A stretch of DNA of 64,000 nucleotides, from contig NC_058369.1 of assembly GCF_018350175.1 (NCBI RefSeq), forward strand, positions 12,958,001 through 13,022,000. Reading direction: 5' to 3'. The position numbers and the translations under genes are program-made. Origin of the DNA: Felis catus. Its lineage: Eukaryota. The notes below the pieces were generated by a model. That model did no database searches and was not told the DNA's origin. It saw only the letters and a list, made by a program, of their open reading frames with translations. Shown here one piece after another: positions 6,793-33,503 of this stretch. Positions within the stretch are counted from its first letter, which is position 1. Each line of letters starts with the position of its first letter.

Positions 6793-7028
6793 NNNNNNNN
6801 NNNNNNNNNNNNNNNNNNNNNNNNNNNNNNNNNNNNNNNNNNNNNNNNNNNNNNNNNNNNNNNNNNNNNNNNNNNNNNNNNNNNNNNNNNNNNNNNNNNN
6901 NNNNNNNNNNNNNNNNNNNNNNNNNNNNNNNNNNNNNNNNNNNNNNNNNNNNNNNNNNNNNNNNNNNNNNNNNNNNNNNNNNNNNNNNNNNNNNNNNNNN
7001 NNNNNNNNNNNNNNNNNNNNNNNNNNNN
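6793..7028. other. Assembly gap (236 N)
   Basis: Run of N. Confidence 1.
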
Positions 7029-8196: not shown

Positions 8197-8562
8197 CCGG
8201 TCAGCCTGGCACTGGCGGAAGCTGGCGTTGATCCGGTCCAGATCGCGGCGGGCGCTCCCCAGCAGCTGCATGACCGTGTCCTTGGTGCGGGAGGTGAGGT
8301 TGAGCTCCTTGGACAGGTTGGCCTGGGAGGCCGTGAGCCCCACGAGCTGGCTGTACAGGCCCTCGGCCCGGCGCTCGGTGGCCTGCAGGTTGGATTCCGT
8401 GCTCACGTGCACGTTGCCGTAGACCATGAAGAGGACGAGGCCCAGGATGATGAGGAACTGAATGAGCGACACAAAGAGGAAAAAGTAGCGCAGGTAGTAC
8501 CAGCAGCCCCTCGGGCCGCCCCCCTCCCGGGAGTACGCGCCGTGCTCCGCCGCCAGCCCCAT
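8197..8562 (-). CDS. PLVAP: PLVAP coding exon 1 (cytoplasmic tail, TM, start of coiled coil)
   Basis: MGLAAEHGAYSREGGGPRGCWYYLRYFFLFVSLIQFLIILGLVLFMVYGNVH...RQCQADR matches the PLVAP/PV-1 N-terminus; 366 nt, ends at a GTAAGG donor. Confidence 0.97.
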
Positions 8563-8740: not shown

Positions 8741-10730
8741 CTCCCACCCTGGCTGTGAAGGGAGGGGCCGCGCCCCCCCTCCCCCCCGCTGGACTTCTGA
8801 CGCTCCCGCCGGGCGGGGGCGCCAGCCGGGTGACGAGGGGGGGGGGGCTTCCTCGCCGCTCCGAGCCTCGGTCTCTCTCTCTCCACCTTGCCCTTGCTCC
8901 GGGCCCAGCGCCGTTCTCAGCGCTTGCCGCCCAGGATCTCAGGTCGTGGCCCCTGTATCGTGCGGAGGAGGAAACTGAGGCACGGGGAGGTGAAGGGACC
9001 GTCTGGGGGTCTCACGCCGTTGGTGCACAGAGTGGGACTTACCTCCCCCACCCCGTGGGCTGGCTGCAGAGGTGTGTCTAAATCGGGAGCTGAGTCGGCT
9101 GGGGTGCTTGGCCCCCGGGGTACTTGGCACAGTAGGTACTTGGCACAGTAGTGCTTCCCCGGGCCGGGGAGGGGCTGATCCATGGATGGCAGTGGCCCAG
9201 GCTCCCCAAGCTGTCAGCCCCACCCGACGCCCCGGCTCCCATAGGTGCTACATAAGTGCTCTGGGAGCAGCAGAGTAAGCCGCAGTGAACTTGGAGCTGG
9301 GAGAGAAGGCTCACCCAAGCGAGCTCGAGTGAGGGGCTTCTCCTGCCCCTTCTCAGTTTCTGCCTCTGTGAGACGGGGTATGGGTGGCGTCCCCGGTCAC
9401 CGGGCCGGAGGGGGGGGGTGGGCGGCCGTAAGAAAGGGTTTGCCATTGTTATTATTACTATCGTTTCGTGCTGGGAGCGTTATTTCGGGGCTCTGGGAGA
9501 CGGTGAAGGGGCAGTGCCAGATAGGTGGGCATTGAACTTCACTGTGGGTCATCTCCAGGTGGGCGTCAAGGGAATTCGAGGACCAAGGGCAAAGGATTCT
9601 GGGTGCGTCCTCCTGTCCATTCCCTTAGAACCAGGAGCTCCATGCTGGATGAGGCGTTAGCCTCAGGCTTGGCCGTGAGGGACCCTGAGTCTTAGGGAGA
9701 CACCGTGGGACACAGCCCCCTGGCTCCATGGGGTCAAGGCTGGTAGGAGGGAGGGATGGAGGGGGGCGGGCAAGGGGCCGGCAGGTGGCAAGAAGGCTGG
9801 ACCACAACACAATCGCTGTATACTGCCTGTGTGCGTAAGGTTGGGGGTGGGGGGAAGGACCCATCCCCCCCCCCGTCGGCCAGGGCAACGGAGTTGGGGG
9901 TAGTTGACGGCGGGGAGGGGGTCCTCCAGGGTGGTGTTCGTCACAGAGGCAGAAGTTGGATTGGGACAGAGGAAGTTCCCAGGGGGAGGCAGGAAACCCC
10001 TGTCTGACCTTTGGCCTTTGCAGCTACCCGGTGATTCCTGATTCCGGACCCTTCCCAGCTTCCCAGCGGCGAGTGGGGGGGAGGAGGGTTGGGGGCTGCA
10101 AGTGGTGCCCAACCAGCTATTTCTCTGGGTTGGCCAGGCCCACCCGAGTCCCCTGGAACAGGGTGGGAGGCCGCGTAGGCAGAGTGGACCCGCGGCTTCC
10201 ATTTAGGGCTCTGGGGTTCGGGTCTGGCTGTGCCCCCTACTGCTGCGTGACCTCAGACGAGTGACTTTCCTTTCTTCAGCCTCAGTTTCCTCTTGTCTAA
10301 AGCGGAGGCGACGCAGCCAGGGGTGGAAACATTTGTCACGGCGCCTGGCACACGTTCAACCTTAATAAGTGGCGGGACTTTTTTTTTAAGGCCACAGAGG
10401 CTGGGTCTTGTGTCACCTCTGATGCCGGGCGGAGAAACTGATATGCGGGGGAGGGGCGCTGCCTCCAAGTACAGGTGCTCGGGGCCTGTGAGAGCACTGG
10501 GGGACAAAGGGCAGGACAGGGGTCTGGCCCGGGGAACGTGGGTCCGGCGGGAGATGCTCAGACACGGGGGAGGGGGGGGGCAGTGGCGGGGCCAACATCA
10601 GCAGGTGTGACAGTCTCCATAGGTACTTGAGATCCTGGCTGCTCTTCATGATATACTGAGCCTGACATCTATTGTCAAGGAAAAAGAAGGCAAACCATAA
10701 ATTCCCAGAAAATTAAAAAGCCACCGTAGA

Positions 10731-12780: not shown

Positions 12781-13062
12781 GAAATAATATTTCTAGTGAA
12801 GAACCATTTCAGTGAAATCCAAAAAACCCTCTACTTTTACTATCGGTGTGTTTGGTTAAATTCAAATGAAAATTAAGTTTTGTGCTTTTGGAGGTGACTG
12901 AGGAGGAGCCCCGTCCCCTCTGGGCCTCCTTGTTACTGGCTGATAAAAGGCACCCCACTTTCTTACCTGGGTCTGGGGGGTTGACCGAGTCAGGCTGCTG
13001 CTGTCCCAGCCTGCTTCTCCTGCAGCCGCTCCAAGGTTTCCCATTTCTGTCCCCTCCTACTG

Positions 13063-13114
13063 TCACCACAGCCACAGGAGGGGGGCTCCAGGGATGGGAA
13101 GCCAGGGCAGGGAC
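13063..13114 (-). CDS. Candidate CCDC194 exon 5 encoding a hydrophobic C-terminal tail (SLPWLPIPGAPLLWLW*)
   Basis: Long pyrimidine tract and cctcctag|G acceptor; phase matches the AGG|GTGAGT donor at 17861; a further CAG|GTAAGA donor at 12967 and an AGTAAA at 12836-12841. Confidence 0.5.
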
Positions 13115-13172
13115 CTAGGAGGGGGCGATGGTGATAGGGGCGGGGACAGATAAAGAGAGACAGAGACTCAGA

Positions 13173-13598
13173 GGGGCGCCTGGGTGGCTCAGTTGGTTAA
13201 ACGTCCTCCGACTCCAGCTCAGGTCAGGATCTCAAGGTTTGTGAGTTCGAGCCCCACGTCGGGCTCTCTGCTGTCAGTGCAGAGCCCATTTTGGATCGTC
13301 TGTCCCCCTCTCTGCCTCTCCCCTGCTGTCTCTCTCCCTCTCTCAAAAATAACATTTAAAAAAGAGAGAGAGGGGCGCCTGGGTGGCGCAGTCGGTTAAG
13401 CGTCTGACTTCAGCCAGGTCACGATCTCGCGGTCCGTGAGTTCGAGCCCTGTGTCGGGCTCTGGGCTGATGGCTCGGAGCCTGGAGCCTGTTTCCGATTC
13501 TGTGTCTCCCTCTCTCTCTGCCCCTCCCCCGTTCATGCTCTGTCTCTCTCTGTCCCCAAAATAAATAAATGTTAAAAAAATAAAATAAATAAATAAAA
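13173..13598 (+). mobile_element. Two tandem CAN-SINEs (13173, 13372)
   Basis: Second, young-subfamily copy inserted at the tail of the first; AAAGAGAGAGAG flanks. Confidence 0.9.
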
Positions 13599-14620
13599 AA
13601 GAGAGAGAAAGAGACAGAGAGAGAGAGACTTGGAGACAGAGAGACAGAGACTTGGAGGGATAATTAGAGAGTGGGAGGCAGAACAGAGCAAAGGCAGGTC
13701 AAAGACTGGCCCTGTGAGGTGGGAACAGATGGGGGTCCAGGAGGCAGGTCCCACCAAGGAGCGCTATTTACTTCCCTGGGCAGCTGAGGGATCCTCAGCG
13801 CAAGGAGGGGTGGGGGGCTGGGCTTGTTCTCCCCAGGTCACCCTCAAACCTCACCTACACCCTGGAGGTTCAAAGCCCTCGCTCAGTCTGTGTCCTCTCT
13901 TTCTTCCCAATTCTTTCTGACACCAGATCTAACTGCCATTCCTGCTCACACACCTGCCTTGGCTCCCTATTTCCCTCCCTCCCCGAAACTGATTTTCAGG
14001 GGTCCGGTGGTAGGGCCAAGATGAAGCCCGCAGAGTAAGTTGGTAATAATGATGTTTTATGCGCCATTTACACCCCTGAGCCCAGCCCTTTTACCCTTGG
14101 ATCCCACAGCGACCCAGTGAAGGGGTCTTAAGTCAGACAAAGCAAGATCAGTCTCCTGGTCTCCAGCTCTGCTTGACTCCAGAAGAAGCCACTTCCTGCA
14201 CACTTCTGGATTGACGCCAGAGTTGGGGGTGGGGTGAGGGCAGCTTTCAGAACCACCCTTAACCTCTCCAGCTGAAGCCTTCAAGGGCAGCAATCGGGTG
14301 AGCAAGTTGGGGCGACCCCTGGTGGCTGTCAGCAGAACTAAGCGATTAGACCTTCCTCCCCTCAGCCGCACTTCCTCCTTGGGAGTTGACCCTCCAATTC
14401 CTCCTCCACGTGGGCCCCTCCCAGGTAAAGCCCCAGATCCGGCACGTCTAAACCCCAGGGTGGTAGTGGGGGTAATGAGCAGGGCTGGATGAGGTGGGGG
14501 AAAGAGTTCCGAGGGCTTCTACTGCCCTCAATTATCAGCCTCTTAGGAATTTTTTAAAACAAATTTTAATCATTTTAAATGTCATACAGGTGCATGGTTT
14601 TCAAAATGCAAACTTTACAG

Positions 14621-14815
14621 GGGGCGCCTGGGTGCCTCAGTCGGTTAGGCGTCCGACTTCGGCTCAGGTCATGATCATCTCACGGTTCGTGGGTTCGAGC
14701 CCCGCATCGGGCTCTGTGCTGAGCCTGGAGCCTGTTTCAGATTCTGTGTCTCCCTCTCTCTCTGCCCCCACCCCTGTCTCCCTCTGTCTCAAAAATAAAC
14801 ATTAAAAAAATTTTA
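14621..14815 (+). mobile_element. CAN-SINE with TSD
   Basis: TSD AAAATGCAAACTTTACA. Confidence 0.9.
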
Positions 14816-15510
14816 AAAATGCAAACTTTACAAAAGGGCATACAGAGAAACAAGAGACTGTCCCCCCCACCCCCCAGCCCTCCACCCCAGCCCAGCCCTC
14901 TAGCCCCCTCGCTCCTAGCTCTCAGCAGGTACTATCTGCCCCGAAGTCGGTGACCAGTGTTTCCTTCAGAGTTATTTGCATTCGTCCCTGCATTTTGAAA
15001 AATGCACACCAATTATCACCCTCCTGCTTTTTACATTAATGTATCTCGGAGGAGATTTGCTTTTTCACCTTAAAGAGTGCATAGTATCCCACTCTATGGA
15101 TGTATGGACACTCATTTATAACAGTCACCAGCCGGAAGACATTGAGGTTGTTTCCAATTTTTAACAATGACCAAGAATGTGATAACAAATGTCCTCGTCC
15201 ACCCCCACCCCCCCCCCCCCCCCCGCTTAGTCTCTTTTTAAAAAGTAAACCTTTTCTTTTGGAATAACTTTAGATTTACAGAACAGTTGCAGAGATAGTA
15301 CAGAGCCCCTGAACAGCCGTCACTGAACTTCTTCCATGGCCAAGTTCTTTGACACCATGGCATCCAAATTTTATTTGTCCAAACTAAGAAATTAACTCTA
15401 GTGCATTAAAATAATTATACTCTAGACTTGATTTGACCTTCTCACTAAGTGTTTTTCTGTGCCAGGATCCAACCCAGGGTTCTGCATTGTATTTTGTCCA
15501 TCAATCTGAT

Positions 15511-15557
<47 letters not shown>

Positions 15558-16010
15558 TAAGTAGGCTCTGCACCCAACCTGGGGCTTGAACTCATAACCT
15601 GTAGATCAAGAGTGTGCTCTACAGACCGAGCCAGCCAGGTGCCCCTGGTCCATAATTTTGTACCCATGTAAATATGGTTGTAGAAAAATTTCTAGAAGGG
15701 GAATTGATGGGTCAAAGGATGTATACTATTTTTACTTTTTTGAGAGGTTCTAGAAAATTGCCCTTCCAAGTGGTTGTACCACTGGGCTCTCTCACTAGCC
15801 CCATGTGGGATTACTTGTTTCTCCACAGCAGTGCCAGCGCATGGTACTTTGCGATTTGCTCGTTTTCATTTTTGCCAGACTAACGGGTAGAAAGTGGTAC
15901 CACTTTGTCATTTCAATTTGCAATTCTTTTCTAGGAAAGAGGTTGGTCGCTTTTTTTTTTTTTTTTGCATATTTCTATGAAATGACTGTCTATATTCTTT
16001 GCCCATTTTT

Positions 16011-16226
16011 CTTTTTTTTTTTTTTTCAACGTTTATTTTATTTTTGGGACAGAGACAGAGCATGAACGGGGGAGGGGCAGACAGAGAGGGAGACACAGAA
16101 TCGGAAACAGGCTCCAGGCTCTGAGCCATCAGCCCAGAGCCCGACGCAGGGCTCAAACCCACGGACCGCGAGATCGTGACCTGGCTGAAGTCGGACGCTT
16201 AACCGACTGCGCCACCCAGGCGCCCC
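16011..16226 (-). mobile_element. CAN-SINE (young subfamily)
   Basis: TSD TTGCCCATTTTT. Confidence 0.9.
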
Positions 16227-17856
16227 ATCTTTGCCCATTTTTCTACTGAGCTGTTTTTTGAAAAATTAATTGATAAGAGCTCTTTACGTAAGAAGGAAAT
16301 TAGTTTATTCCTGGAGATAAGTAACTATATGAAATAGATCTAAGAAAGTTTCAGTTAGTTCTCTTGGGTTTTCTCTATATAAAACCACACTACCAGCAGG
16401 TAAAATTATGTTAAATTGCTTCCAAGGCTCTCCTGCCCAAAATGCCAACCTGAAACTAATCTTACAGAAACATCACAGAAACCCAAATTAGGACACCAGA
16501 AAATGACTGCCTTGGGCCTTTAAAAAACGCCAACGTCATAAAAGGCAAAGACATACTGAGAAATGTTCCAGATTAAAAGAGCTAGAAGACCTGACAAATA
16601 CAATGTGTGAGCCAGGATATTCTTTTGTTATAAAGGACATTATGAGAACAGTTGGCAAAGTCTGATTAAAGTCTGTAGATTAGATAATGGTGTTTTATCA
16701 ATGTCCACTTCCTGATGTTCATCATTGTACTGTGATTATGTGGGAGAATGTCCTTGTTTTTAGGAAATGCATACTCAACTGTTATGGGTAATGAGACATC
16801 GTTTCTGTGTGTTTTTCAGAAGAGGTTCAGAGAGAGGAAGAAGAATAAAGCAAAGGTGGTAACTAATCTTTGTGGAATCTGGATAAAGAATATCCAGGAA
16901 TTCTTTGTACTAATCCTCCAGTTTTTCTGTAAGTCTGAAGGTATGTCGAATATAAGGTAAAAGACGAAATTAATGTGAAATTGAGCCATATGGAATTGTT
17001 GGTATTTCTATTATTTTTGACCTATGTAAACAGGGCTTACCCACGATCCAAACTGTTATTTCCCTACCACTCTCCTACTATCCATACCCCTTCTTTCTTT
17101 TTCTTCTCTAAGTGCGTTGGCTAGTACCTCCAGAACAATATTAAATACTCCACAGTGGTCATCCTCACGTTCGCCCTCATTTTGAGGCCTTTTCAGAACT
17201 TTTCTCGTTTGATCCATCACCATGGTAAATCTTATTAGCAGACTTCTGAATACTGAGCCATCCCTGCATCTCAGGTATAAGGCCCCTTCGTTGTGATGTA
17301 TTTTTAAAATGTGGTGCTTAATGCTCTTTTGCTAAAATTCCATTTGGGACTTCTGTACCCTCCTCATAGCTAGAGGGGTCTGTAGTTTTCCCATTGTGCC
17401 ATCTTGGTCGGTCTGTGTTGTCAAGGATAGGCTGGCTCGCCAAACATGATTCTAATCACTCGATACACAGACAAGGTAAACTGAGGCCCAGAGAGGAGAA
17501 GTGACCCTTCCAGGTCACTCCTGAGCCAGGGCTGGACCCTAACTCTTCATGCCTGTGGGATGAAGCAACACTGTCATCAGAAGGGACTGAAGTCTCAAAT
17601 CAGCACTATCTCATTGGGTCATCGAATGGGCCTTAGTTTCCCCATCTGTAAAAAAAAAGCATTAGTTGGTTGGGGAGAGAGAGTCGAGTCTCCTTTCTGT
17701 AGATTCTGTTCAGAGTGGCTCCTGGGTCCAAAGCTGAGCGTTGATGGCTGTCGACTGGGCATCTCATCCAGCGTGGACACCTCTATATGGGTCCCAGCAG
17801 GGCCGCCACATTGTGTGCCCTCCCGGCCTCGGGCCCTCATCCTGCTAGGGGCCGAC

Positions 17857-18007
17857 TCACCCTCGAGCGCGCCGCGCCGGCCGCCGGCAGCCCCCCGAAG
17901 TTCTTGGGCGAGAACGTGAGCGGGGGCTGGGTCGCGGTCGGGACCCGGAGCGGGATCGGGGGTGCGGCACTCTGCGCTGGGGGCCCATCTCGGCTTCCAG
18001 GGCTTTA
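17857..18007 (-). CDS. CCDC194: CCDC194 exon 4 (Arg/Pro/Ser-rich basic tail; stop if unspliced, 234-aa product)
   Basis: cttcctgtcag| acceptor; KALEAEMGPQRRVPHPRSRSGSRPRPSPRSRSRPRTSGGCRRPARRARG*; the TGA overlaps a GTGAGT donor. Confidence 0.9.
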
Positions 18008-18574: not shown

Positions 18575-18707
18575 GCGCGTTCGCGCAGCGCCGCCTCCCG
18601 GGCCGCGCAAGCTTCGGCCTCGGCCTCGGCCGCGCGTGCGCGCTGCTGTGCCTCGTCCAGCCGCCGCCCAGACTCCGTGGCCGCCGCCTCCCAGCGCGCC
18701 AGCGCTT
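18575..18707 (-). CDS. CCDC194: CCDC194 exon 3 (133 nt)
   Basis: cccgcag| acceptor; ALARWEAAATESGRRLDEAQQRARAAEAEAEACAAREAALRER; GC|GTGAGT donor; frame continuous. Confidence 0.92.
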
Positions 18708-19114: not shown

Positions 19115-19211
19115 CTGTGAGCGCCCCGTTCTCAGCCCCCATCTGGGTCCCCTGTGCCTTCGCCTCCTCGATCTCAGTCTTCAGGGTCATCAGTTGGGTC
19201 TGAAGCCGGCT
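19115..19211 (-). CDS. CCDC194: CCDC194 exon 2 (97 nt)
   Basis: ctccccag| acceptor; SRLQTQLMTLKTEIEEAKAQGTQMGAENGALT; G|GTGTGT donor. Confidence 0.92.
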
Positions 19212-20285: not shown

Positions 20286-20609
20286 CTGGCGGCCCTCACA
20301 GGCCCTTAGTGCCTCCTCCAGCTCCCGACGGACACGGTTGGCCTGGTTCAGCTGTCTGGCCAGGGCCTCCTGGCGTTGGGTAGCCTCTGCCAGCTGGCGC
20401 CGCAGCTCCTCGACCTCTGGCGCCAGGTCCCTGGGGGGCGCCGTGGCGTTGGCACCTGCCTCCGGGCAGCGAGGTCCCCGGGAGGCCGAGGAGGCCAGAT
20501 TCCAGGCCAGCAGGGCCCCGCCGGCTGCCGCGGCCGCCAGGAACACCGCAGCCCCGCACAGGGCTAGCACCCGCCAGGCGCGTCCCGGCTCTGGCCCCAG
20601 CTCGGCCAT
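20286..20609 (-). CDS. CCDC194: CCDC194 exon 1 (TM plus start of coiled coil)
   Basis: MAELGPEPGRAWRVLALCGAAVFLAAAAAGGALLAWNLAS...EEALRACEGRQ; 324 nt; CAG|GTAGGC donor. Confidence 0.93.
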
Positions 20610-28827: not shown

Positions 28828-28948
28828 TCAGGCCAGCAGAGCAACGAAGGCCAGGAGCAGGTGCACAGAGACCACCAAGGGGCTGAGCGCTTTCAAGGAG
28901 CTGGCAGACGCGACTTCCTTTTTCTTGCTCGAGGTCTCAGTCCCTTTT
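28828..28948 (-). CDS. BST2: BST2 exon 4 (GPI-anchor signal and stop)
   Basis: ttcccccag| acceptor; KGTETSSKKKEVASASSLKALSPLVVSVHLLLAFVALLA*; GTAAGA donor 11 nt after the stop. Confidence 0.95.
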
Positions 28949-29187
28949 CTGGGGGAAGATGTGGGCACGACTCAGGCAACCGCCCGGGACTGATTGCCAC
29001 CAGCTCTAGCCTCGTCGCCCCTCAGAATCTCCCCTCTCCCCCCGCACCAAGTCAGTGGGGAGGAGAGTGGGCTTGTAGGACCAGAGGGGCAAGGATGGGA
29101 TTCAAACTTTGCGTGCAAAGGGGGTCCGGGGTCTCGGGGTAGGACGGGCGGGTGGAAGGGGCGTGGTCGGGGGGGCGTGGCGCCAAC

Positions 29188-29248
29188 CTCAGTCTTTCCA
29201 CCTCCACCGAAGCGTTCTGCAGCTTGTGCTTCAACTCCTCAATCTCTC
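29188..29248 (-). CDS. BST2: BST2 exon 3 (61 nt)
   Basis: cccaccttag| acceptor; EIEELKHKLQNASVEVERL (N-A-S sequon); weak AG|GTTGGC donor. Confidence 0.92.
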
Positions 29249-29525
29249 CTAAGGTGGGAGAGAAACGGCAGGGTGGGGGAGGGGGGGAACCCGTCAGCAC
29301 AGTGGCACCGTCCTTCACCGGGCTCCATCCTGGGACCTAAGACCGCCTCCGCCCCGCCCCCACGCCACCCCATCTTGGAAACCTGACGTCCTCCTTTCAC
29401 ACCCTCCACTGGGATTTTCTGGCAGCTCCCTAGCGACCCCAACCCTGGGGCCCTCCCTCTCCCCTCTTCAATACTTGACCCATCCCTCCGAATCCGTCTC
29501 CTTGGAAAGCTTTGTGCTTTCTCAC

Positions 29526-29601
29526 CCCGAAGCTCCTTCCCTTTCGCGAGCCACTCCTGGCTCTGGGCCTTCTCCATCTCCAGGGAAGCCAACAGGGTTA
29601 C
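29526..29601 (-). CDS. BST2: BST2 exon 2 (76 nt)
   Basis: ctgtcccag| acceptor; VTLLASLEMEKAQSQEWLAKGKELR; G|GTGAGA donor. Confidence 0.94.
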
Positions 29602-30372
29602 CTGGGACAGAGGGGAGGGCTAGAGACTGGGGTTCTGGCCTAGAGGGGGGGCTGCAGACCAGGGCCCCAGACTCCCTTCCCAGGCCCTAGGTTCAGAGGG
29701 GTCCAGGTCCAAACCCCTTTCAGATTCACCTCCGATCCTCCCTGCACCCCAGTCTCCCGCCTCCAAGTATGGCCACAACCTCCCATCCTCCCAGGGCCGC
29801 TAAGGATGTGATCCTCGAAATAGGGGGGTTGAGGCCCCCAACGTGGGAATTTGGAGGCTCCCTATGCCCAAAGCCTAGGAGAAACTCCTAGACCTCTTTT
29901 TGCCCAAGATTTAGAGGTCCCCTCTAGCCCAGAACACAGGGGGATTTCTGAGCCCAAGTTAGACGTCAGCGTCCCATATCGGGACCCAAATGAAAGTTTC
30001 AAAGTCTCTCTCTCATTCAGTGGATGTATAAAGAGCCCCTTCCCATCCCAACCCCTAGATGGGATCTCTGCTATACAGGATTGGTGCCAAGAGGAGTTTC
30101 TAGCCCCCCCACAGCAGGCTGGAGGTTTTTGCACATCCTAGCGGGGATACTGACACACCCGATTTGGATGCTCCAAGGAGTTTTAAGGCCCTGCCCCACA
30201 CCAGCACTGCTGAGAGAATTCAGAGGTCCCCAAAGCCTGATGGGGGGTTATTGGGACTCAGGTCCCTATATGAGGGTCCAGGGGCAGTTTCAAGGTCTGT
30301 CTTTATCTCCATCTAGACCGGTGGGGACCACCCAAGCACGGGGGGGCCTCTCCAGGAACTGCAGTAGCTTAC

Positions 30373-30618
30373 CAAAGTCTCGTTGCAGGTGGCAGCCTGG
30401 ACCTCGTTCCTCAGTAAGCCTTCCCAGGCTTGGGTTAGCCGGACCTCCAGGAGGCGGGTGACACCGTGACACTCCTCCTCTGCTAGGAGGCCATCCTTGC
30501 AGGCTTTGCTGTTGGCCTTGACAACAAAGATGACCAGGGCCACGGACAGACCCAGCACCGCCAGGATCAGAAAGCCCCCCAGCCACCTCTGCCACCCAAG
30601 ACTCCGACCTGGCACCAT
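30373..30618 (-). CDS. BST2: BST2/tetherin exon 1 (short cytoplasmic tail, TM, Cys-containing ectodomain)
   Basis: MVPGRSLGWQRWLGGFLILAVLGLSVALVIFVVKANSKACKDGLLAEEECHGVTRLL...AATCNETL; three Cys and an N-E-T sequon; TTG|GTAAGC donor. Confidence 0.95.
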
Positions 30619-30842
30619 TGACTCTGAGTAGTCAGTCCTGGGCACAGGCCAATAGTGGTAAAAAGCAGGTGCCTCTACATCTGCCCCTGAATGAGTGAGT
30701 TTGGGCAGGAGCTAGGGGGGTGCTGGGACGTCCTATTGGCTGAGGCCGCCCCCTTATTAACATAACGGCCGTCCTGGCCAATGACAAAGGCTCGAGAGAA
30801 TCCTTTGACCTGGAGGCTCTGGAATGGGTATTTGCAGGCAGA

Positions 30843-32946: not shown

Positions 32947-33503
32947 NNNNNNNNNNNNNNNNNNNNNNNNNNNNNNNNNNNNNNNNNNNNNNNNNNNNNN
33001 NNNNNNNNNNNNNNNNNNNNNNNNNNNNNNNNNNNNNNNNNNNNNNNNNNNNNNNNNNNNNNNNNNNNNNNNNNNNNNNNNNNNNNNNNNNNNNNNNNNN
33101 NNNNNNNNNNNNNNNNNNNNNNNNNNNNNNNNNNNNNNNNNNNNNNNNNNNNNNNNNNNNNNNNNNNNNNNNNNNNNNNNNNNNNNNNNNNNNNNNNNNN
33201 NNNNNNNNNNNNNNNNNNNNNNNNNNNNNNNNNNNNNNNNNNNNNNNNNNNNNNNNNNNNNNNNNNNNNNNNNNNNNNNNNNNNNNNNNNNNNNNNNNNN
33301 NNNNNNNNNNNNNNNNNNNNNNNNNNNNNNNNNNNNNNNNNNNNNNNNNNNNNNNNNNNNNNNNNNNNNNNNNNNNNNNNNNNNNNNNNNNNNNNNNNNN
33401 NNNNNNNNNNNNNNNNNNNNNNNNNNNNNNNNNNNNNNNNNNNNNNNNNNNNNNNNNNNNNNNNNNNNNNNNNNNNNNNNNNNNNNNNNNNNNNNNNNNN
33501 NNN
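32947..33503. other. Assembly gap (557 N)
   Basis: Run of N between a pyrimidine microsatellite and SINE sequence. Confidence 1.

What the first reader, a model, noticed from the sequence alone, without database searches (positions are those of the whole stretch)
12836..17865. Hidden fifth exon could give CCDC194 a tetherin-like C-terminal GPI signal
Seen: the CCDC194 stop (CGA GGG TGA GTC, 17865-17854) lies inside a near-perfect donor AGG|GTGAGT. 4.7 kb downstream on the same strand, beyond L1/SINE DNA, there is a long pyrimidine tract and a cctcctag|G acceptor (13114). Joining them keeps frame and gives ...RTSGGCRRPARRARG-SLPWLPIPGAPLLWLW* (250 aa), followed by an AGTAAA and a U-rich stretch (12836-12841). 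Established: GPI signals are small omega residues, a polar spacer and a terminal hydrophobic run; tetherin activity depends on TM + coiled coil + GPI topology; CCDC194 is the TM-coiled-coil neighbour of BST2, and GPI-bearing variants may already be described in other species. Inference: felids may make a GPI-anchored CCDC194 isoform (omega near SGG), i.e. a second tetherin-like virion tether, switched by alternative splicing. The tail is short and Pro-rich, so the signal may be marginal.
Basis: partly seen in the sequence, partly recalled or inferred. Interest (0 to 1): 0.82.

Follow-up and report, generated by a model that had tools for sequence, protein, structure and literature searches.

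The report
Unsupported GPI-tail exon for cat CCDC194
The splice donor inside the CCDC194 stop codon is real and already annotated, but the distant "fifth exon" proposed to add a tetherin-like GPI signal is most likely a chance acceptor-like site encoding a poor, unconserved hydrophobic tail.

Summary
CCDC194, also called TMCC(aT), lies on the minus strand as four exons encoding 234 aa, identical to the domestic cat RefSeq protein. Its TGA sits inside AGG|GTGAGT. Joining 17861 to 13114 gives a 250-aa product ending SLPWLPIPGAPLLWLW.

The donor is not hidden. Felid, human and macaque models already splice from it. In cat it joins a MIR-like acceptor 215 nt downstream (17645) and adds only WGN*. 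About 145 ortholog sequences were inspected, and none uses the 13114 site.

The 13114 block is single-copy. It is less conserved than neighbouring intergenic DNA. Its reading frame is lost in fox, panda and donkey. In the other felids and the hyena the tail ends in R or Q. The few changes seen in Feliformia are mostly amino-acid-changing.

The tail has 4 prolines in 15 residues. Its mean Kyte-Doolittle (KD) hydropathy is 1.05, against 2.74 for the BST2 GPI tail in the same window. It follows an arginine-rich spacer.

About 0.2 such sites are expected by chance downstream of the donor.

Verdict: known alternative donor, and a proposed GPI exon that is probably not real. Low interest.

The parts
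20286..20609 (-). CCDC194/TMCC(aT) exon 1 coding part: short N-terminus, hydrophobic anchor or signal segment, NAT glycosylation site, start of the coiled coil
   Evidence: 100% match to felid CCDC194 proteins
19115..19211 (-). CCDC194 exon 2
18575..18707 (-). CCDC194 exon 3
17857..18007 (-). CCDC194 exon 4 with the canonical stop (TGA 17859-17857); encodes the Arg/Ser/Pro-rich end ...SGGCRRPARRARG*
   Evidence: this C-terminus recurs in carnivores, primates, cetaceans, horse and other mammals
17855..17863 (-). Alternative 5' splice site AGG|GTGAGT overlapping the stop; identical in all 9 carnivore loci and donkey
   Evidence: used in RefSeq and Gnomon isoforms
17633..17647 (-). Annotated felid fifth-exon acceptor (ttttacAG|A TGG GGA AAC TAA), MIR-like; adds WGN* to give the 237-aa cat isoform
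   Evidence: present from felids to panda
12966..13114 (-).
12836..12841 (-). AGTAAA variant poly(A) hexamer with a downstream U-rich run; kept in felids, lost in hyena
13173..13300 (-). Carnivore tRNA-derived SINE (identified from memory of the family, antisense to CCDC194) abutting the pyrimidine tract; panda has no orthologous copy here
8197..8562 (-). PLVAP exon 1 coding part (ATG 8562-8560); the proposed exon lies about 4.5 kb upstream of it, in the CCDC194-PLVAP intergenic DNA
   Evidence: PF06637 gene called downstream in all related loci
28831..28971 (-). Last coding exon of BST2 with a typical GPI signal (...SASSLKALSP + LVVSVHLLLAFVALLA*), used as the in-window comparison
   Evidence: PF16716 gene called at the matching place in related loci

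Best explanation
This is the domestic-cat CCDC194/TMCC(aT) gene, the TM-coiled-coil neighbour of BST2 and PLVAP. Its stop codon overlaps a conserved, strong 5' splice site that is a known alternative donor. If the donor is not used, translation ends at ...RRARG* (234 aa). If it is used, the Gly codon is completed by a downstream exon and a short lineage-specific tail is added. In felids the annotated partner is a MIR-like acceptor 215 nt downstream, which adds WGN*. In human the tail is LTENLVD*, and macaque models carry several tails. The acceptor-like site at 13114 is, most likely, an unused or at best rarely used cryptic site in single-copy intergenic DNA. The hydrophobic-looking 16-residue reading is a by-product of a C/T-rich sequence. 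The annotated use of the donor and the anatomy and conservation of the 13114 block are shown. That the 13114 site is not spliced in vivo is inferred.
For: The gene model and the 250-aa join were reproduced. The protein is identical to cat XP_019674862.2 over 234 aa. Annotated isoforms continue past RRARG: WGN in seven felid species, LTENLVD in human, orangutans and siamang, and several tails in macaques. The WGN acceptor maps to 17645. Among the roughly 145 ortholog sequences inspected, and in a second search keyed on exon 4, no protein carries the SLPWLPIPG tail. The distal exons of the macaque and meerkat models map to window 10306-9992 and 9344-9218, not to 13114. The block is 65% identical to donkey, against 76-80% for neighbouring segments. 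A 10-11 nt indel destroys the frame in fox, panda and donkey. The tail ends R or Q in five other felids, and hyena adds G>R and L>P. The cat tail scores KD 1.05 with 4 Pro, against 2.74 with 0 Pro for the BST2 GPI tail encoded in the same window. The crude acceptor score is 3.6, against 8.5 for the MIR acceptor. Canonical AATAAA signals at 16309, 16042 and 15375, and a run of overlapping AATAAA matches in an (AAAT)n repeat at 15555-15515, lie between donor and acceptor.
Against: No RNA reads could be laid, so absence of the junction is not shown. The AG at 13115 is invariant in all 11 species compared, and a GT follows the block in 10 of 11 (fox has GC), so the piece has the outline of an exon. 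It is the only one of the 15 comparably scoring acceptors that yields a hydrophobic end. Stop position and tail length are kept across Feliformia. CCDC194 is poorly expressed and poorly sampled, so gene models could miss a rare isoform.
Confidence: 0.8

Rival explanations
1. One reading: cats make a 250-aa CCDC194 isoform by splicing 17861 to 13114. Its tail acts as a GPI attachment signal (omega near S222-G-G), creating a second tetherin-like tether.
For: Strong donor, in-frame join, small S-G-G triad, 28 residues from omega to the end, and an uncharged C-terminal 15-mer in cat. Human and mouse TMCC(aT) restrict HIV-1 release once a GPI signal is added artificially (Blanco-Melo et al., cited in PMC10617486). 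In birds, splicing at exon 4 toggles a second hydrophobic region.
Against: No model or contig carries the tail. The spacer CRRPARRARGS holds 5 Arg. Other felids end in R or Q, and the frame is lost in Caniformia. By my count of the alignments, 5 of 8 changes in Feliformia alter the amino acid, as expected for neutral DNA. A strong donor-like CAG|GTAAGA follows 98 nt after the stop. If that donor is used, the stop lies far enough upstream of the last junction for the transcript to be degraded by nonsense-mediated decay (inference).
Confidence: 0.04
2. The 13114-12966 block is a real but non-coding exon. It could belong to an unannotated intergenic or read-through transcript (CCDC194 to PLVAP-upstream exons) or to a lncRNA. 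It would have no protein role, and any CCDC194 product it created would be degraded.
For: AG and GT are conserved at both ends in 10 of 11 species. Macaque and meerkat models show that CCDC194 transcripts can run on into exons just upstream of PLVAP; the macaque gene span is 15.3 kb.
Against: Conservation continues past the donor-like site and is no higher than in flanking DNA. No model includes the block.
Confidence: 0.1
3. The block is a cis-regulatory element, for example a PLVAP upstream enhancer. Its nearly invariant core (GGGGACAGAAATGGGAA, then TTTTATCAGCC) would be transcription-factor sites rather than splice signals.
For: Runs of columns invariant from cat to donkey lie inside and just past the block, 4.5 kb upstream of the PLVAP start.
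Against: The motif reading rests on memory only. Overall identity of the block is below that of its neighbours. No chromatin or binding data are available here.
Confidence: 0.06

Closest known systems
CCDC194 / TMCC(aT) annotated C-terminal isoforms (cat XP_019674862.2, 237 aa; human NP_001382150.1, 241 aa, versus NP_001382151.1, 234 aa; macaque X1-X5)
   Same: Same donor inside the stop codon, and the same logic: unspliced gives RRARG*, spliced gives an extra tail from a downstream exon.
   Different: The annotated partners are other acceptors (17645 in cat). Their tails are short or hydrophilic and none resembles a GPI signal. The 13114 partner appears in no model.
[quoted passage not shown]
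   Same: Alternative splicing at the exon 4 donor decides whether the protein carries a second, C-terminal hydrophobic region and so a tetherin-like topology.
   Different: In birds the unspliced read-through form carries the hydrophobic region and the spliced form is short. The long form stayed intracellular and showed no significant antiviral activity. Here the spliced form would carry the hydrophobic end, and that form is hypothetical.
BST2/tetherin GPI signal (encoded in this window, 28971-28831)
   Same: Type II TM plus coiled coil plus C-terminal hydrophobic end; neighbouring gene, for which a common ancestor has been suggested (PMC10617486).
   Different: BST2 has small residues (SASS), a mild spacer and a 16-residue Leu/Val/Ala/Phe-rich end without proline (KD 2.74). 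The proposed tail has an Arg-rich spacer and a Pro/Trp-rich end (KD 1.05).
Exonised interspersed repeats supplying new terminal exons (MIR, Alu)
   Same: The real felid fifth exon starts in a MIR-like core (ACAGATGGGGAAACTAAGG). One macaque tail reads like antisense Alu (both recognised from memory).
   Different: The 13114 block is single-copy in the cat genome and is not repeat-derived, although a SINE abuts its pyrimidine tract.

Membership tests
CCDC194 / TMCC(aT) ortholog | Sequence identity to named CCDC194 proteins, and position between BST2 and PLVAP | tested here: met
   234/234 identical to cat XP_019674862.2. 116 hits at E<=0.001, most of them named CCDC194 by their source. BST2 lies upstream and PLVAP downstream in the window and in the related loci.
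CCDC194 / TMCC(aT) ortholog | N-terminal hydrophobic anchor followed by a coiled coil | tested here: met
   A 23-residue segment with KD 2.11 near the N-terminus. The heptad-like Glu/Leu/Arg/Ala-rich region was read from the sequence; no coiled-coil predictor was run.
Real spliced exon (13114-12966) | AG acceptor with a pyrimidine tract, and a usable donor upstream | tested here: met
   The acceptor scores 3.6 on a crude matrix, lower than exons 2, 4 and the MIR exon but higher than exon 3.
Real spliced exon (13114-12966) | Junction-spanning RNA reads or cDNA | not testable with these tools
Real spliced exon (13114-12966) | Presence in gene models or protein records of any species | tested here: not met
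   None of about 145 ortholog sequences, and no hit of the exon-4 search, carries the tail. Other distal exons map elsewhere.
Real spliced exon (13114-12966) | Reading frame and stop conserved among relatives | tested here: not met
   Kept in Feliformia only. Fox, panda and donkey have a frame-shifting indel and no stop for more than 66 codons.
GPI attachment signal | C-terminus in the ER lumen (signal peptide or type II anchor) | tested here: inconclusive
   An N-terminal hydrophobic segment is present. RefSeq calls the human protein a precursor and the literature describes it as TM-CC. Topology was not tested here.
GPI attachment signal | Small omega, omega+1 and omega+2 residues | tested here: met
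   S222-G223-G224 is the only acceptable triad at a workable distance from the end (read from the sequence; rule from established knowledge).
GPI attachment signal | Short, mildly polar spacer of about 5-10 residues | tested here: inconclusive
   The spacer CRRPARRARGS has 11 residues, 5 of them Arg. This is atypical but not excluded.
GPI attachment signal | Terminal hydrophobic run of about 12-20 residues | tested here: not met
   The 15-residue run has 4 Pro and 3 Trp and scores KD 1.05, against 2.74 for the BST2 tail in the same window. It ends in R or Q in the other felids and hyena.
GPI attachment signal | Positive call by NetGPI, PredGPI or big-PI; PI-PLC release | not testable with these tools
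   No GPI predictor is installed, and the release assay is an experiment.

The most novel reading that the evidence does not exclude
In the domestic cat lineage, a CpG change (CGG to TGG) removed the last charged residue of a latent 16-codon reading. A minor CCDC194 isoform spliced 17861 to 13114 would then be GPI-anchored, or otherwise doubly membrane-bound, giving cats a second, splicing-controlled tetherin-like tether.
Probability: 0.03. Interest if true: 0.7.

Novelty: not a real feature. Interest (0 to 1): 0.15.

Why it matters
If it were true, a natural GPI-bearing mammalian TMCC(aT) would be a second virion tether beside BST2. Published work already shows that adding a GPI signal to the human or mouse protein is enough for it to restrict HIV-1 release. 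As it stands, the result is useful mainly as a correction. The stop-embedded donor of CCDC194 is a conserved, already annotated alternative splice site. Its downstream partners are lineage-specific and probably inconsequential. The cat tail proposed here lacks support from models, conservation and composition.

Tried and rejected
(1) RNA evidence. The look-up of sequencing runs returned 20 holders, none on record as RNA, plus four raw RNA runs of the same species.

(2) I guessed that the macaque tail SRRRRRWEG... was the ortholog of the 13114 block. A local tblastn placed it at window 10057-9992 instead, so the guess was rejected.

(3) The macaque locus was withheld, and I did not pursue it.

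(4) The cat protein P0122 is not on record for contig look-up, so relatives were used instead.

(5) I first read the invariant columns around the acceptor as a sign of constraint. That reading did not hold, because the whole intergenic region aligns to donkey and this block scores below its neighbours.

I left it unexamined.

(7) MaxEntScan, NetGPI and PredGPI are not available.
Full report
**Observation**

On the minus strand, CCDC194 has four coding exons: 20609-20286, 19211-19115, 18707-18575 and 18007-17861. The stop follows at 17859-17857, giving 234 aa.

The exon 4 end reads CGA GG|GTGAGT, so the TGA lies inside AGG|GTGAGT. At 13116-13114 there is cctcctAG|G after a pyrimidine-rich tract. 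Joining 17861 to 13114 keeps the frame and yields 250 aa ending SLPWLPIPGAPLLWLW*. AGTAAA is at 12841-12836, followed by a U-rich run.

One point is loose. The 1.6 kb after the stop is single-copy DNA that aligns with donkey at 76.5%, not L1/SINE.

**Identity and setting**

The 234 aa are identical to domestic cat XP_019674862.2, and an exon-1 search gave 116 significant hits, most of them named CCDC194 by their source.

- PLVAP starts at 8562 on the same strand.
- BST2 lies upstream, with its last exon at 28971-28831.
- The proposed exon therefore sits in the CCDC194-PLVAP intergenic DNA, 4.5 kb upstream of the PLVAP start.

CCDC194 is the TMCC(aT) of the tetherin literature. Human and mouse TMCC(aT) restrict HIV-1 release only after a GPI signal is added artificially. 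Bird TMCC(aT) has a spliced short form and a read-through long form with a second hydrophobic region (PMC10617486). The biological premise is therefore sound and already published.

**The donor is real and known**

The end ...SGGCRRPARRARG* recurs in carnivores, primates, cetaceans, horse and other mammals. The DNA CGAGG|GTGAGTC is identical in nine carnivore loci and donkey. Annotated isoforms continue past the final Gly:

- WGN* in cat, cheetah, Leopardus, jaguarundi, leopard, jaguar and clouded leopard.
- LTENLVD* in the curated human isoform 1, in orangutans and in a siamang.
- Several tails in macaque isoforms X1-X5.

The felid WGN* exon begins at 17645 (ttttacAG|A TGG GGA AAC TAA), only 215 nt downstream, in a MIR-like core. 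That acceptor is present from felids to panda. A fifth exon exists, but it is a different one and adds three residues.

**Does anything use 13114?**

About 145 ortholog sequences were inspected, and none carries the tail. A second search keyed on exon 4 found only canonical RRARG-type ends in assembled contigs, and none of those came from cat.

Other distal exons in models map elsewhere:

- Macaque: window 10306-10247 and 10057-9992.
- Meerkat: window 9344-9218.

**Conservation**

I fetched the orthologous loci of lion, tiger, jaguarundi, Leopardus, bobcat, hyena, meerkat, arctic fox, panda and donkey.

The AG is invariant in all of them, and a GT follows the block in all but fox, which has GC. 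However, almost the whole intergenic region aligns to donkey. This block scores 65%, below its neighbours at 76-80%, so the invariance is weak evidence of constraint.

In the proposed frame:

- Lion, jaguarundi, Leopardus and bobcat end ...LLWLR*, and tiger ends ...LLWLQ*. Bobcat also has A to V.
- Hyena reads ...IPRAPLPWLR*.
- Meerkat reads ...PLPWLLR*.
- Fox, panda and donkey carry a 10-11 nt indel, lose the frame, and have no stop for more than 66 codons.

By my count of the alignments, about 5 of 8 changes in Feliformia alter the amino acid, as expected for neutral DNA. The cat W arises from a CpG transition. AGTAAA is kept in felids but lost in hyena. The block is single-copy in the genome.

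**GPI plausibility**

The only workable omega triad is S222-G-G. It leaves an 11-residue spacer with 5 Arg, then a 15-residue end with 4 Pro and 3 Trp. The table compares this end with the BST2 signal in the same window.

| Tail | Mean KD | Hessa-scale sum | Pro |
|---|---|---|---|
| Proposed cat CCDC194 end (15 aa) | 1.05 | +7.3 | 4 |
| Cat BST2 end LVVSVHLLLAFVALLA (16 aa) | 2.74 | -1.6 | 0 |

No GPI predictor was available.

**Chance and context**

- 15 of 694 AG sites downstream of the donor score at least as well on a crude matrix. This site scores 3.6, against 8.5 for the MIR acceptor.
- 9 of 670 AG sites give an equally hydrophobic uncharged end.
- About 0.2 sites with both properties are expected by chance.
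- Canonical AATAAA signals at 16309, 16042 and 15375, plus overlapping matches in an (AAAT)n repeat at 15555-15515, lie before 13114.
- A strong donor-like CAG|GTAAGA follows the block 98 nt after the tail stop. If the block were recognised as an internal exon, the product would be a candidate for nonsense-mediated decay (inference).

**Limit of this work**

RNA reads are the decisive test, and I could not run it. No holder run is on record as RNA. I worked beside those places afterwards and masked them in my scripts.

**Verdict**

The donor inside the stop is a conserved alternative splice site that is already annotated. The GPI-signal exon at 13114 is most likely not real (confidence about 0.8). 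A cat-specific anchored isoform remains possible at a few percent.

Noticed in passing
window 17633-17660 (-): The annotated felid fifth exon of CCDC194 (adds WGN*) starts in a MIR-like core, TTTTACAG|ATGGGGAAACTAAGG. A second MIR-like copy at 10306-10247 matches the first distal exon of the macaque isoforms. The MIR identification is from memory of the consensus.
   Followed up: partly
window 17860-17889 (-): The CCDC194 end CRRPARRARG recurs widely in mammals and contains RRAR followed by G, which resembles a minimal proprotein-convertase (furin-type) site. Any tail added after the Gly might be clipped off. This is a speculation from the motif only.
   Followed up: no
window 16228-17860 (-): The 1.6 kb after the stop is the best conserved part of the intergenic region (76.5% with donkey, 87% with hyena). 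It ends near an AATAAA at 16309, so it is probably the CCDC194 3' UTR.
   Followed up: partly
L007:13997-14441: In the meerkat assembly the exon 4 region of CCDC194 lies inverted relative to the rest of the gene. The meerkat gene model skips it and runs on to exons just upstream of PLVAP. This may be an assembly error or a real inversion.
   Followed up: no
window 9218-10306 (-): Exons used by macaque and meerkat CCDC194 read-through models map here, 0.7-1.7 kb upstream of the PLVAP start. This suggests recurrent transcription from CCDC194 into the PLVAP promoter region.
   Followed up: partly
window 12925-13060 (-): Short runs that are invariant or nearly so from cat to donkey (GGGGACAGAAATGGGAA; TTTTATCAGCC just past the donor-like site) could be transcription-factor sites of a PLVAP upstream element.
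   Followed up: no
The terminal exon of the Iriomote-cat CCDC194 model (P0004) maps to the matching place in lion (L001:15353-15409).
   Followed up: no
window 28831-30711 (-): BST2/tetherin lies in the window. Its first coding exon holds the TM segment, and its last exon ends in a typical GPI signal.
   Followed up: partly
window 6793-7028 and 32947-33503: Two runs of N, left as they are.
   Followed up: no
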